Assembly: GCA_043228905.1 (NCBI GenBank)
Contig: JBHGNT010000013.1
Span: forward strand, 13,392,001-13,456,000
DNA from: Azolla caroliniana
Taxonomy: Eukaryota; Plantae; Polypodiophyta
Length of the DNA: 64,000 nucleotides
Reading direction: 5' to 3'
Numbering within the stretch: the stretch's first letter is position 1; each line of letters begins with the position of its first letter. A program made the translations under genes and the position numbers. This document shows positions 47,597-52,878 of this stretch, piece by piece. Under the pieces are notes generated by a model. That model saw nothing but the letters and a program-made list of their open reading frames with translations, did not search any database and had not been told where the DNA came from.

Positions 47597-49212
47597 GAAC
47601 ACTTAACCTTACCATTCGGAAAGTTTACCTTATTTACTTACATTTAAAAAATCCACAGGTTAAGGATGATCCCATTAGGATTATGTGATCTAAAGCATCT
47701 TGTTTGAGGTCTTGTTGATTAAAACCTTAGATTTCAAATTTTCAATCACATATAGTTTTTTTGGTTCAATTGTAGTAGTTTTCATCCCATTTATTTGTAG
47801 TGTATTTGTTGTTTTAGTGTTTAGTATTTTGGTGTTCCATATGTTGTAATTATGGTCTAATTTTAAGTCCCCAACTACTTTCTTTGTAGTTTATTGATTG
47901 GTTTACTTTTCCGTGTTCTATGTATTGTAATCCAATTGTATTTGACTTTCATCTTATTTATTTTTGTAGTCTAACTGATTATTTTACTTTGCAACCCAAA
48001 GTTGTTATGATGGAAGAGTCATGGTATGGTGTCTTCAATGTCTTCATTTCTCTCTAGATTGAATAAGACGATAAATGTCTTTACAAATAATGTCACCCTC
48101 TTTCTATATATCTCATTGAAGATATCATATTTGTGTGCTGTGAAGCACAATTCATCCTTATTGTGGCTCTTGTTGGCAAATATCCTAAGGAATTTGGGTC
48201 GCAAAAATGATCCAATCATGTAGAACTATTAAGAGGAGCTATAAATTATCAGCATTTGCAAACATAAAAGTGCCATCCTAAATTACGATGATCTTCTAAC
48301 GAGAAACCGCAAATTAGCTGATGTTAAAATTTGTTTCAACTCTTTTACGGGTTTGAATTTTAATCCAAGAATTAGTACTCTCTTCTAGATGCTCTCTCGA
48401 TGAACATTTGTGACTCAAAATTATTAAGGTTAAGATACAATCATTAAATTAAAAGTGGTCAGCGCATCTTTTTAAGTTCTCCCTAAAAACAGGGGGCCTC
48501 TATTTAATGTACTTTTCTCTTCTATGAAGTAACAATTTGCATATTTCATTCTATTATCTTCTGAGTAGATATGAGATCTCCTATTTTCAAACAAATTCAA
48601 TGGTGATTTGCAAATACGTTTATAAACAATCAAGCATGTAATATTGAATCTAAGTCTTTCTTACTGATGGGAAATAGGTATGGAAAGGATCTGAAACTTG
48701 AACTTCACAATATTTTAGTGCCGATAATGTTATATTAACATTGACAAAGAGCAACACAACCCAAGAATGAGAAAATATGTTAGCATCTACTTGAGGCTGA
48801 ACCGAACCTAGAGAGAAATCATGATTACAAATATAAAAGAGAGGAATCGCCATATGGCATTTTGGTTGAGCTACGTACTTAGCCCTCATCAAAGTCCTTT
48901 CTCAACTAATATTGTTACAACTGTTTATGTATCACAAAGCTTGAATTACAAATGCCAACAATGCATTGTTGTTTTATATTACATAGAAAAGTCTCTTAGA
49001 AGACCTTTCTTTCCCTTTTCCCATAGGCATTCATGATAAAGATAACTCTTATGCACTTCTGTATCTTTATTTGCAAGCATTACATCTCTCATATTTTACT
49101 CGCAAGGATAAAGGCATATACAATATACCACATACTTATGAAACCTCAAAGATTTCGAAGTGTCAACACTTCACCGGTGATTTGTTACATGAGTCCATTT
49201 CGCTCCTTTCAG

Positions 49213-52200
49213 TCACTTTATTGCATCTTTTAACATGACATTATCTGCATAGATATTATGCATGCACACATAAGTTCCAACATCTTTTTCATCCAATAAC
49301 AATGCATATTCAAAAGCATGTCTTCCGAGCTCAACTTCGCCCCATTTGGAGCAGCCACCTAAGATAGAATGCCAAACAACAAGATCAGGTGAGAATGGGA
49401 TATCCTTGATCATTGTAATTGCTGAATATACTTGTCCTGCTCGACAAAGAGCATCAACAATGCACGTGTAATGCTCAAGATCTGCTTTAATCCCATACTC
49501 TTTGCTCATCGATTTCATGTACAATTGCGCCTTATCCACCAAACCAGCATGGCTGCATACATTCAGAAGATTCTGGAATGTAATCAGATTTGGCTTCTCA
49601 CCTTCTTCTTTCATCTTTTCAAAGGTTTTGAAAACATTCTCACATTCACCTAGTTGAGTATATCCTCCAATAAGTGCATTCCATGTAACAACTGTTCGAA
49701 CTTCCAGCTTTTCAAATAATCGGCATGCTGTTTTCAAGAAGCCATTTTTACAATATAATTCAACTAATGCAGTTCCCAGGGCAACATCCCTCTCTAGCCC
49801 CTTCTTGGTGATCTCCATATGCATATCTTGGCCTTTTTCCATAGCCCCTATATTGCCATAGGCTTTTAATATATAAACAAAGGTAATAGCATCTGGAGGA
49901 ATGCCATCTGTTAGCATTTGGTTGAAACACTCAAAAACAGCTTCAGAAGATCCGTGTTCAGCATATCCACCAATTAATGCATTCCAAGAGATTATATTTC
50001 TCTTAGTAAGCTTATCAAACACATATTGTGCCTCTTCAAGCAAACCACATTTTGCATACATATCAACCAAGCTGCTACTGACCAACATATCTCTATCAAA
50101 GCACATGTTGCAGATTTCTCCATGTAGTTGACGGGCCTTTCCTGCATTTCCTAAGGCACCACAAGCTTTCAAGATATAAACAAAGGCCAACGGATCTGGA
50201 GAAATGCCTTCAAGCTTCATTTTCTCAAAAGAATCCAATGCATTTAAACTATAGCCATGCTCGGCATACCCTGCAATTAAGGCTGTCCACAACATTACAT
50301 TACGATCCTGAAAATTCTCGAACACATGTTGTGCTTTTGCGAGCAATCCATTTTGCACATACATATCCACTAACGCTGTGGCTACTGCAATACTTTCTAT
50401 TTTCCCACTTTTGTCGATCTGTGCATGTATTTCTTTAGCTTTTTCCATGGCTCCTATCTTGCTATAAGCTTTCAATATGCCCACAAAAGTGATACTATCC
50501 GGAGAAACACCTTCCAATTGCATTTGTTCAAATGCTTGGCATGCTTCAACACCACGTTCATTTTCAATAAATCCTGTAATTAGCGTATTCCATGCGACTC
50601 TGTCTCTAACAGGCAATTTGTGAAACACTTCTTGTGCTTTCTCAATAAAACCACATTGAGCATACATGTGAAGCAATGAACTACCTATAAACACGTTGGT
50701 TTCCAACAAGCTCTTACTGGCTATTTCGGAATGTATTTCGCACCCTCTTTTTGAGTCTTTAAGGTTAGCACATGCTTTAAGCAATGCCACATAAGTATAC
50801 ATACTAGGCTTTAAGGAATCATCCTTCTTCATTTCATGATACAATAAGAGAGCTCGATGTGGCTCTCCATGTTTGGCATAACCTGAAATAAGAGAATTCC
50901 ATGAACATTCATTCCTATAGAATAACTTGTCGAATAATTGTTGGGCTTCTTGAATTCGTCCGACTTCAACAAGAAGTGATACAAGTAGGTTTCCAAGTGA
51001 TATATGATTTTCAAGACCCATATTGTGCATATGAGCATGTAACCACAGCGAGGGAAGCAAAAGTCTTTGATTTGTACATTTGTTCAAGAGGGACGCCATA
51101 ATATCAATTGATGGCACTCTTTCTCCAAAAGAACTAAGTGTCTCCTCCACTGAGGCTTGTGTTTCCTCATCACTATAACTGCTAGCTATTTCCCTTTTAT
51201 GTCCCTGATTGGTACATTCTAAACTATAATCCAATCAGAGTACATTGAAATTCTAAAACAAGTGAAAATGAAAATATACCAAAGCATCAAATTCATTGGT
51301 CAGCTAATCCCGAAACTCTCTATTGGTACATTGTAAACTATAATCCAATAAGAGTTCATGGAAATTCTAAAACAAGTAAAAATGAGAACGAAAGTATTAC
51401 CAAATCATCAAACTTGTTAGCAAGCTAATCTCAAAACCATCTATTTGTACATTCTAGATTCTAACGGAGCACATTGCAATTCTAAACAAGTAAAAGTGAG
51501 CGTTTGAGTACCAATCACCAAATTCTATAGCGAGCTAATCCCAAAAACCCCTTGATTCTAAAGTTTCTATTAGAGGATATATGAATTCCAAAAACAAAGT
51601 AAAATGAAAACTAGAGCACCAATCGAGTTTATTAGTGATGCAACACTGATTGGTACATTCTAAACTCTAATCTTACCAGCGCTCATAGGAACTCCAAAAA
51701 CAGAGTAAAGTTAGTAGTAGGATACCGATTGAGTTCATTGCTGGGATAGCCCTAAAGAAACCCTGATTTGTACATTGTAAACAATAATCCAGCCAGAGAA
51801 ATAGAAATTCTACAACAAGTACTAAATCGTCAGGTTCACAAATGATGATGGAAGCTGGATCCATCATTTACCGTTCAGAAATGAAAAGGTAAAACCCAAA
51901 ACCCTCAGTATAAATAGATTAAAACAACGTATTGAGAGCTTACCTCAAGAAGCCTATCTTGAAGCCAGATTGGGTTGAAACGATTATCTATCCACAGCCT
52001 TTCTTTGCGAATTTTATGTCTGAAATCTGGGGCTTTAGGGTTTGTCTGTTTAAATAAGAAACAGAGGAATTAACTCAAACATTTCCAAATAATAAGTAAT
52101 AATAGATAAATGACTATTATCTTCTTCATCTACTACTATTGCTACAACTACAAAGGAATGAAACGGATATAAGAAATCATGACGACATGGACAGATGAAA

Positions 52201-52322
52201 GGAGACGAATAGGAATCAATGAAGGAACTTACTTTCCTCTTCCTGATATCCCACCATTGGGAAGGATGAGAGAAGTAATCGAGCCAGAGATCAGCAACAT
52301 GCTCTGCAGATTGAGAGGGCAT
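49213..52322 (-). CDS. PLS-class PPR protein (ends within the E region, no DYW) with predicted N-terminal OSB-type PDF motif, ~727 aa
   Basis: Main exon 51204-49213 has repeated P/L/S motifs (SWNSLISGYAKHG, SLVDMYAKCGLLEEA) and E motif PDLVVWHSILGGC. Upstream exons 52322-52233 and 52045-51944 have GT-AG borders and are all phase 0. The PPR part is certain; the exon linkage is predicted. Confidence 0.85.
51205..51830. repeat. Degenerate ~95-120-bp tandem repeat (~6 copies) in the PPR gene intron
   Basis: ctgattggtacattctaaactataatcc..aaattctaaaacaagt recurs at 51205, 51320, 51441, ~51551, 51646 and 51763. Confidence 0.75.
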
Positions 52323-52363
52323 TCCTCCAAAAGACCTCAGAAAATTACGAGTGATAATCCCCC

Positions 52364-52443
<80 letters not shown>

Positions 52444-52454
52444 TTAAAGAATGA

Positions 52455-52878
52455 TCAATTGATGGAATGAATGGATATCTTAGGTTAATGGAATGGATAT
52501 CTAGTACAAGTTAAGGGATAAAGTTTATGTATGTATTGTAATTCACGATTTGGCCATTTCTGTATAATGAATATATTATGATTAATTGATGGAATGAATG
52601 GATATCTTAAGTTAATGGAATGAATGGATATCTAGTAAGTAAATTAAGGGATAAAGTTTATGTATTGTAATTCGCAATTTGGCCATTTCTGTATAATGAA
52701 TGTATTATGGAACCCTTGAGTCATGCGTAACATACTATGTAATCTTGAATGTATTATGAATGGATATCTTGAGTTAATGGAATGAATGGATATCTAGTAA
52801 GTAAGTTAAGGGATAAAGTTTATATATTGTAATTCGCAATTTGGCCATTTCTGTATAATGAATGTATTATGGAACCCA
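52455..52878. repeat. Tandem repeat, ~125-165-bp unit, 3 copies, upstream of the PPR gene
   Basis: gaatggatatct..ttaagggataaagttta..ttggccatttctgtataatgaat occurs three times. Confidence 0.85.

What the first reader, a model, noticed from the sequence alone, without database searches (positions are those of the whole stretch)
49213..52322. PLS-PPR protein with a spliced-on N-terminal OSB 'PDF' ssDNA-binding motif: candidate DNA/RNA dual-binding organellar factor
Seen: two small minus-strand exons that the ORF track does not join, 52322-52233 (MPSQSAEHVADLWLDYFSHPSQWWDIRKRK, donor GTAAGT) and 52045-51944 (TNPKAPDFRHKIRKERLWIDNRFNPIWLQDRLLE, AAACAG acceptor, GTAAGC donor). Both are phase 0, and a CAG acceptor at 51205 joins them in frame to the 663-codon PPR exon. 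Known: LW..F..P..WWDxR..K.NPKAPDF+HK..E.LW matches the PDF motif of plant OSB (organellar single-stranded DNA-binding) proteins, where it follows an SSB-like fold. PLS-E PPR proteins are sequence-specific organellar RNA-editing factors. Inference: this is a chimeric architecture linking an ssDNA-binding module to an RNA-recognition array with no DYW deaminase. It could couple editing to nucleoids, transcription bubbles or R-loops. I do not know of a characterised protein with this layout, but I cannot check the literature here.
Basis: partly seen in the sequence, partly recalled or inferred. Interest (0 to 1): 0.85.

Follow-up and report, generated by a model that had tools for sequence, protein, structure and literature searches.

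The report
PPR gene with OSB-type PDF motif
This fern gene really does begin with a small motif otherwise known from plant organelle DNA-binding (OSB) proteins and continues into an RNA-recognising PPR repeat array, but the layout is an old, widespread and apparently undescribed gene family rather than a one-off, and this copy has lost its editing-enzyme end.

Summary
Two small minus-strand exons (52322-52233, 52045-51944) together encode one OSB-type PDF motif. RNA-derived contigs from two studies splice them exactly as predicted. Both exons score against a PDF profile built only from non-PPR, OSB-type proteins (28 and 38 bits).

The join to the 663-codon PPR exon (51944>51204) is not directly shown. 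It is supported by frame, by contig ends and by the coverage edge. It is also supported by homologues in which the second PDF half and the PPR array share a single exon.

The architecture is not unique. PDF+PPR proteins occur in Sphagnum, Diphasiastrum, Adiantum and transcript assemblies. They made up 14 of the best 150 hits, and three ESM Atlas clusters carry the same N-terminal fold. Many of them have E and DYW domains.

A phase-0 intron at the same motif position is shared with both PDF copies of a fern OSB gene. This argues for DNA-level common descent of the module.

This copy has three peculiarities. It has an extra repeat-filled intron. It stops inside E2, with a decayed remnant after the stop. 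It has no room for an N-terminal transit peptide.

I found no paper describing the fusion. The scan has already noted it many times on other DNA of this genome, with two follow-ups. Dual DNA/RNA binding remains untested.

The parts
52323..52435 (-). 5' UTR, at least this far, running through a (CT)n tract
   Evidence: Contigs of X1 and X3 lie on 52233-52353 and carry 82 and 54 further letters upstream; the tool masks the repeat 52354-52450. There is no in-frame start codon upstream of 52322. I also saw no ATG in any frame in the sequence.
52233..52322 (-). Exon 1 coding part, 30 codons: start Met plus the first half of the PDF motif, ending ...WWDIRKRK; donor gtaagt
   Evidence: Sequence. 28.1 bits to OSB-only PDF HMM positions 3-23. 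Spliced to exon 2 in RNA contigs. 95.6% identical in a relative's DNA.
52046..52232 (-). Intron 1, 187 nt, phase 0, GT..AG, inside the PDF motif
   Evidence: Joint 52045>52233 in X1 and X3. Same position and phase in the Adiantum, Sphagnum and Diphasiastrum PDF-PPR genes and in both PDF copies of a Ceratopteris OSB gene.
51944..52045 (-). Exon 2, 34 codons: second half of the PDF motif (NPKAPDFRHK...LWI...NPIW); donor gtaagc
   Evidence: Sequence. 38.0 bits to OSB-only PDF HMM positions 27-57. Both RNA contigs end exactly at 51944. 98% identical in a relative.
51205..51943 (-). Intron 2, 739 nt, phase 0, inferred. It is largely a ~114-nt tandem repeat, and I read acceptor-like ...accaatcag copies in several units of the sequence. 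It is absent from the three homologous genes examined.
   Evidence: Tandem repeat at 51208-51453. Only the acceptor before 51204 keeps the PPR frame open in phase 0. Coverage in X1 and X2 falls to zero upstream of about 51212. The junction itself is not shown. X14 has a contig reaching 51227, and X1 and X3 have pieces inside the intron.
51109..51204 (-). Exon 3 start: 32-codon acidic linker between the PDF motif and the first PPR-like motif
   Evidence: The frame is open for 35 codons before the first Met of exon 3 (P about 0.09 by the intron's stop frequency). Linkers of similar length and acidity occur in P0095 and P0112.
49384..51108 (-). PLS-class PPR array: L-S, then four P-L-S triplets, then P2-L2-S2
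   Evidence: Pfam PPR, PPR_1, PPR_2 and PPR_3 at E 1e-47 to 1e-78. Motif boundaries were read by hand from the translation.
49282..49383 (-). E1 motif, complete, 34 codons
   Evidence: Pfam E_motif on exon-3 residues 623-659 at 26.5 bits, just under the 27.3 cut-off. Aligns with E1 of P0095 and P0112 by eye.
49213..49281 (-). E2 motif cut short after 22 codons by TGA (49215-49213)
49150..49212 (-). Same-frame remnant after the stop that resembles the KxPGxSW start of a DYW domain, followed by further stops: a decayed former C-terminus
   Evidence: Translation compared by eye with P0095 and P0112. This is an inference.
48800..49212 (-). 3' UTR, at least to the edge of the stretch laid
   Evidence: Contigs of all four runs cover 48800-49297.

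Best explanation
This is a transcribed three-exon nuclear gene of a fern. It encodes a protein of about 727 residues. The parts, in order, are:
- a start Met;
- one OSB-type PDF motif, split by a conserved phase-0 intron;
- a short acidic linker;
- a PLS-class PPR array;
- E1 and a truncated E2.

It belongs to an old land-plant family (moss to fern) in which a PDF module was joined at the DNA level to the N-terminus of PLS/DYW-type PPR RNA-editing factors. The module shares its internal intron with OSB genes.

Likely mechanism (inferred): the PPR tract reads a specific organellar RNA sequence. The basic, aromatic-rich PDF module adds a non-specific single-stranded nucleic-acid contact. That contact could be RNA 5' of the PPR footprint, or ssDNA at nucleoids.

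This copy has lost E2 and DYW. It could therefore only act as a specificity or binding factor with a deaminase supplied in trans, or it may be on its way to becoming a pseudogene.
For: Shown:
- Exon, intron and frame anatomy.
- Intron 1 is spliced in RNA-derived contigs of two runs from two studies.
- Both contigs end exactly at the exon 2 donor. Exon 3 coverage ends at about 51212 in X1 and X2.
- The exon peptides tile the N-terminal motif of P0112, P0055 and P0095.
- They score 28 and 38 bits on an OSB-only PDF profile.
- The PPR-derived profile finds SSB+PDF proteins at E 1e-32 to 1e-63.
- The AlphaFold model (pLDDT 85.5) matches plant SSB-family and PPR clusters at TM 0.73-0.78.
- PDF+PPR proteins are found in Sphagnum, Diphasiastrum, Adiantum and transcript contigs.
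- The phase-0 intron after WWDxRxxK is shared by four PDF-PPR genes and by a fern OSB gene.
- In the other three PDF-PPR genes, the second PDF half and the PPR array are one exon.
- The orthologous DNA of a relative keeps the ORF and splice sites. Exons are 96.9% identical and introns 90.7% (Fisher p 0.0055), with indels only in introns.

From reviews:
- The PDF motif of OSB1 suffices for ssDNA binding (PMC6963530).
Against: - No contig shown bridges 51944>51204.
- X14 has a contig running 23 nt past the acceptor and no depth on exons 1-2.
- X1 and X3 have pieces inside intron 2, which could mean retention or repeat copies from elsewhere.
- If intron 2 is retained, the frame stops after 13 codons.
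- The C-terminus is truncated within E2.
- The N-terminus has only 9-10 residues before the motif and four acidic residues in the first 25. This is unlike an organellar presequence.
- OSB1 and OSB2 prefer ssDNA over RNA, so an RNA role for the motif is conjecture.
- All runs are labelled RNA only by guess.
Confidence: 0.72

Rival explanations
1. The two PDF exons and the PPR exon are not one protein in practice. Intron 2 is mostly retained or spliced to one of its repeated acceptor copies. That gives a PDF-only peptide of about 77-100 residues. The PPR ORF is then untranslated or starts at its own internal Met.
For: - No bridging contig is shown.
- A contig in X14 extends past the acceptor without exons 1-2.
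- Intronic pieces appear in X1 and X3.
- Read-through stops after 13 codons, and the alternative acceptors give 26-43 open codons.
- Intron 2 is absent from the homologous genes.
Against: - X1 has no depth on either flank of intron 2, yet it has the spliced exons 1-2 and exon 3.
- Both exon 1-2 contigs stop exactly at the donor.
- Only 51204 keeps the long frame open.
- The frame is open for 35 codons before the first Met of exon 3, and that Met lies inside the first PPR-like motif.
- The fused layout is the rule in relatives.
Confidence: 0.15
2. It is a decaying copy: transcribed but functionless. It would be one of many PDF-PPR paralogues in this genome, with its C-terminus lost and a tandem-repeat expansion splitting the coding region.
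For: - A stop inside E2 followed by a same-frame remnant and further stops.
- An extra intron full of repeats.
- No DYW.
- Four of the six exon 1-2 differences from the relative change the amino acid (my reading of the alignment).
Against: - About 727 codons are open across three exons.
- Splice sites and the start are conserved in a relative.
- Exons are more conserved than introns.
- Contigs lie on it in several runs and in related species.
- E-class PPR proteins without DYW are functional editing factors in other plants (general knowledge of the family).
Confidence: 0.12
3. The N-terminal motif only resembles the PDF motif by chance or convergence.
For: No Pfam model exists for it. The motif is short.
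Against: - Profile scores.
- Fold match.
- Identical intron position and phase in a fern OSB gene.
Confidence: 0.01

Closest known systems
[quoted passage not shown] 2006, as summarised in PMC6963530, PMC4166229 and PMC13393729)
   Same: The PDF motif is the same by sequence profile, by predicted alpha-beta-beta-alpha fold, and by the phase-0 intron after WWDxRxxK seen in a fern OSB gene.
   Different: - There is no SSB-like OB fold.
- The motif is single and N-terminal rather than one to many copies at the C-terminus.
- It is followed by a PPR array.
- No presequence precedes it.
PLS-class PPR RNA-editing factors (E and DYW subgroups)
   Same: P-L-S triplets, P2-L2-S2, and E1. The relatives P0095 and P0112 carry full E and DYW domains.
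   Different: - An N-terminal PDF module.
- This copy stops 22 residues into E2.
- It has no DYW.
- It has no evident transit peptide.
Uncharacterised PDF-PPR proteins in public databases (Sphagnum fallax KAH8950714.1; Diphasiastrum complanatum KAJ7558667.1 and others; Adiantum capillus-veneris GOP47_0019224 and KAI5061374.1)
   Same: Same order of modules and same intron inside the motif.
   Different: - Those genes have the second PDF half and the PPR array in one exon.
- Some have two or three PDF copies (P0135, P0167, P0214, P0154).
- The Sphagnum long isoform has a presequence-like N-terminus.
- Several keep DYW.
Other PPR domain fusions (RRM-PPR, MORF-PPR; PMC13386178) and Whirly proteins that bind both DNA and RNA (PMC2532728)
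   Same: The general idea of an accessory nucleic-acid-binding module on, or beside, organellar RNA factors.
   Different: These are different domains. The kingdom-wide survey of fusions that I read does not mention PDF or OSB.

Membership tests
OSB family | One or more PDF motifs | tested here: met
   OSB-only HMM gives 28.1 and 38.0 bits for the two exons, tiling positions 3-57. Fold match to a plant SSB-family cluster.
OSB family | SSB-like OB-fold domain N-terminal to the PDF motifs | tested here: not met
   No PF00436 hit in any exon product. The motif starts about 10 residues after the Met. True OSB-type hits do carry PF00436.
OSB family | N-terminal organellar transit peptide | tested here: inconclusive
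   Only 9-10 residues precede the motif, with four acidic residues in the first 25. No targeting predictor was available.
OSB family | Preferential ssDNA binding | not testable with these tools
   Needs EMSA with the recombinant motif.
PLS-class PPR, E subgroup | Alternating P, L and S motifs | tested here: met
   Pfam PPR families at E 1e-47 to 1e-78. Motif lengths of 35/36/31 were read from the translation.
PLS-class PPR, E subgroup | E1 and E2 motifs | tested here: inconclusive
   E_motif scores 26.5 bits against a cut-off of 27.3 and covers profile positions 3-39 of 63. E1 is complete. E2 is cut after 22 residues.
PPR-DYW editing factors | C-terminal DYW deaminase domain | tested here: not met
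   No PF14432 hit. There is a stop in E2 and only a short remnant after it. The relatives P0095 and P0112 do have it.
PDF-PPR family (uncharacterised, moss to fern) | PDF motif and PLS array in one polypeptide | tested here: inconclusive
   The exon 1-2 splice is shown. The exon 2-3 splice is inferred from frame, contig ends, the coverage edge and homologues.
PDF-PPR family (uncharacterised, moss to fern) | Phase-0 intron after WWDxRxxK inside the motif | tested here: met
   Present in the window gene and in the Adiantum, Sphagnum and Diphasiastrum genes.

The most novel reading that the evidence does not exclude
PDF-PPR proteins are an ancient, functionally distinct class of factors found in non-seed land plants in my sample. 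In them, an OSB-derived single-strand-binding module works together with a sequence-specific PPR tract. It might tether RNA editing or processing to nucleoids, transcription bubbles or R-loops, or extend the RNA footprint. The fern members that start directly at the motif, without a presequence, may even act outside the organelles.
Probability: 0.25. Interest if true: 0.7.

Novelty: new variant of a known kind. Interest (0 to 1): 0.55.

Why it matters
PPR editing factors are usually pictured as a transit peptide, a PPR tract and E/DYW domains. The PDF motif is usually described as a signature of OSB proteins that guard organelle genomes.

A conserved family that joins the two, with an intron shared with OSB genes, has three consequences:
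- The PDF motif is a mobile module and not an OSB-only feature.
- It gives a concrete handle for testing whether RNA editing is physically linked to organellar DNA, or whether the motif also binds RNA.
- It warns annotators that these short 5' exons are easily missed.

For this particular copy, the interest lies in its derived state: an extra intron, a lost DYW and no presequence.

Tried and rejected
- Region-restricted word search with the N-terminus of P0095 found only itself. This says nothing about absence.
- The last word search, with the exon 1 ORF, found only an 81-residue read-through ORF from low-coverage DNA contigs of a relative. It found no spliced peptide, so junction 2 stayed open.
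- Sequence search of the PDB with the PDF profile gave 0 hits.
- Foldseek against the PDB gave nothing at E <= 0.001. VIA-align against 48,161 chains gave a best Z of 2.9. The fold has no clear solved relative.
- Phage lead: ESM Atlas clusters of phage hypothetical proteins match at TM 0.53-0.60. BFVD Foldseek gave nothing significant. I do not build on this.
- A tree of 85 PDF motifs clusters the PPR-linked ones (7 label changes against 19.5 when shuffled). With 60 columns it cannot decide between one origin and several.
- The Zaegel et al. 2006 paper is not held, so its statements are cited only through reviews.
Exons were searched one by one by reference, and the fold was made on the homologue P0095:10-85.
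Full report
**Observation**

- An ATG at 52322 opens 30 codons that end in AAA, followed by gtaagt.
- After aaacag, 34 codons run from 52045 to 51944 and are followed by gtaagc.
- After aatcag, a frame opens at 51204 and runs for 663 codons to the TGA at 49215-49213.
- All three boundaries are phase 0.
- Among all AG sites of the 739-nt interval, only the one before 51204 keeps the frame open into the PPR array.
- The upstream frame has no other start codon between an in-frame stop and the ATG. I saw no ATG in any frame of the known 5' UTR.

**Is it a PDF motif?**

Pfam has no model for it, and the two exon peptides give no Pfam hit.

The two peptides tile a contiguous N-terminal motif in three PPR proteins returned by the PPR search: P0112, P0055 and P0095.

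A profile of those sequences was run against 1.84 billion representatives. It found 1151 proteins at E <= 1e-3 and 486 at <= 1e-10. The top hits are proteins with a Pfam SSB domain followed by C-terminal copies of the motif, which is the OSB layout.

I then built a profile from the non-PPR motifs only. It scores exon 1 at 28.1 bits (positions 3-23) and exon 2 at 38.0 bits (positions 27-57).

An AlphaFold model of the homologous motif (P0095:10-85, 85-row alignment, pLDDT 85.5) is helix, strand, strand, helix, with a possible short third strand. It matches ESM Atlas clusters as follows:
- plant SSB-family proteins at TM 0.75, rmsd 1.7 A over 63 residues;
- three PPR clusters at TM 0.73-0.78.

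No solved structure resembles it.

**Transcription and splicing**

Public runs hold up to 58% of the sampled words of the stretch. That is about the exonic share.

Contigs of four runs were laid on 48800-52600.
- They cover the PPR exon and at least 400 nt of 3' UTR.
- In X1 and X3, which come from different studies and organisms, one contig each joins 52233 to 52045. It skips 187 nt with GT..AG ends on the minus strand.
- Both of those contigs end exactly at 51944, the predicted donor. This is what an assembly graph does at a branch point.
- In X1 and X2, depth on the PPR exon falls to zero just upstream of 51204.

No contig shown bridges 51944 to 51204. Three further observations complicate the picture:
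- X14 has a 130-nt contig reaching 51227 and no depth on exons 1-2.
- X1 has an exact 158-nt piece inside intron 2.
- X3 has two diverged pieces inside intron 2.

Intron 2 is largely a ~114-nt tandem repeat. In the sequence I read acceptor-like copies in several of its units. Retention, alternative acceptors or repeat copies expressed elsewhere could all explain those pieces.

If intron 2 stays in, the frame ends after 13 codons.

All runs are RNA only by the tool's guess. However, the absence of intron 1 and of most of intron 2 argues against DNA.

**Homologues and gene structure**

PDF+PPR is not singular.
- Fourteen of the best 150 representatives combine the motif with a PPR array.
- They come from several loci of Diphasiastrum complanatum, from Sphagnum species, from Adiantum capillus-veneris and from transcript assemblies.
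- Some carry two or three N-terminal copies of the motif.
- P0112 is one uninterrupted ORF on a 3.9-kb run-assembly (Logan) contig. It has PDF, PLS, E and DYW.
- P0095 has PDF, PLS, E and DYW. P0055 and the Sphagnum protein end in E.

I mapped five proteins back onto their genomic loci. A phase-0 intron directly after the Lys of WWDxRxxK is present in:
- the window gene;
- the Adiantum PDF-PPR gene;
- the Sphagnum PDF-PPR gene;
- the Diphasiastrum PDF-PPR gene;
- both PDF copies of a Ceratopteris OSB gene.

A Sinapis OSB gene has lost this intron.

A shared intron position and phase argue that the module moved between OSB and PPR genes as genomic DNA, and that it did so before mosses and vascular plants diverged. 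A tree of the short motifs clusters the PPR-linked copies but cannot resolve the number of origins.

In the three other PDF-PPR genes, the second half of the motif and the whole PPR array are one exon. This supports the fused reading here. It also shows that intron 2 of the window gene is a later addition.

**A relative's DNA**

Three low-coverage ENA contigs carry the orthologous exon 1 - intron 1 - exon 2 - partial intron 2.
- Start codon, both donors and the acceptor are kept.
- Exons are 96.9% identical and introns 90.7% (Fisher p 0.0055).
- All indels lie in introns.
- There are too few changes for a dN/dS estimate.

**The PPR part**

Pfam finds PPR families at E 1e-47 to 1e-78. It also finds an E motif just under its cut-off, covering profile positions 3-39 of 63.

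By hand the array reads L-S, four P-L-S triplets, P2-L2-S2, a complete E1 and 22 residues of E2 before the TGA.

Read on in the same frame, the next 13 codons resemble the KxPGxSW start of a DYW domain. Further stops follow. I therefore take this copy for a truncated former DYW type.

**N-terminus**

The motif begins about 10 residues after the Met, and the first 25 residues hold four acidic ones. That is unlike a mitochondrial or plastid presequence.

The long Sphagnum isoform has a presequence-like N-terminus before its motif. Adiantum P0095, like this gene, starts almost at the motif.

Where the protein goes is open. The basic stretch around the exon junction fits the classical bipartite nuclear-signal pattern by eye. 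The same residues are conserved in OSB motifs, so I give that little weight.

**Mechanism**

Shown:
- a real, expressed gene;
- a genuine PDF module;
- a PLS array;
- membership of an old family.

Inferred:
- The PPR tract gives sequence-specific RNA binding.
- The PDF module adds a sequence-independent single-strand contact.
- Without E2 and DYW, this copy would need a deaminase in trans, or it acts as a binding factor only.

Reviews state that the OSB1 PDF motif suffices for ssDNA binding (PMC6963530). They also state that OSB1 and OSB2 prefer ssDNA to dsDNA or RNA (PMC4166229). The nucleoid or R-loop idea is therefore reasonable but untested.

**Literature and earlier scan notes**

Full-text searches for the PDF motif or domain together with PPR found no description of the fusion. 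These included the motif string itself and OSB combined with pentatricopeptide.
- A 2026 OSB family survey does not mention PPR.
- A 2026 kingdom-wide survey of editing-factor fusions does not mention PDF or OSB.
- The original 2006 OSB paper is not held.

The scan has found this before on other DNA of the same genome. Fifty notes fit 'pdf ppr', and two follow-ups (s1-497268, s1-503990) reached the same reading and likewise found no paper. What I add:
- the shared intron with a fern OSB gene;
- the fold comparison;
- the particular state of this copy.

**Limits**

Exons were handled one by one by reference.

**Verdict**

This is a new variant of a known kind: a PPR factor with an OSB-derived module. 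It is a further, derived member of a family that seems undescribed in print. Interest is moderate.

Noticed in passing
window 51205-51943: Intron 2 is built of about five or six diverged ~114-nt tandem units. I read an acceptor-like ...accaatcag in several of them, and the real acceptor is the last copy. Alternative use of the copies would give short PDF-only products.
   Followed up: partly
window 52364-52440 and 52451-52709: A (CT)n microsatellite lies in the 5' UTR. The relative's contigs have a much shorter version. Directly upstream is a 129-nt tandem duplication.
   Followed up: no
window 49150-49212: After the TGA, the same frame still spells a remnant resembling the start of a DYW domain. 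This suggests a recent truncation.
   Followed up: partly
P0121-P0127: Some angiosperm proteins carry 9 to 13 tandem PDF motifs, for example a 1160-residue Kingdonia uniflora model with 13. This is far more than the one to five copies described in the 2026 OSB survey.
   Followed up: no
P0161 (Striga) and P0166 (Coptis): PDF motifs appear inside models named after ICR2 and kinesin. These are probably merged gene models rather than real fusions.
   Followed up: no
ESM Atlas clusters: The PDF fold matches two clusters of phage (Uroviricota) hypothetical proteins at TM 0.53-0.60, and more weakly Rad52-family clusters. BFVD gave nothing significant. A phage origin of the motif is an open lead.
   Followed up: partly
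L004 (Ceratopteris OSB gene): The 347-residue OSB protein is spread over 44 kb, with one intron of about 34.5 kb before the last exon.
   Followed up: no
These assignments were made by eye only.
   Followed up: no
L008-L010 (ENA contigs): Three assemblies of about 1.7x coverage from one ENA series carry the orthologous locus of a relative. Their 81-residue 'protein' is only exon 1 read into intron 1.
   Followed up: yes
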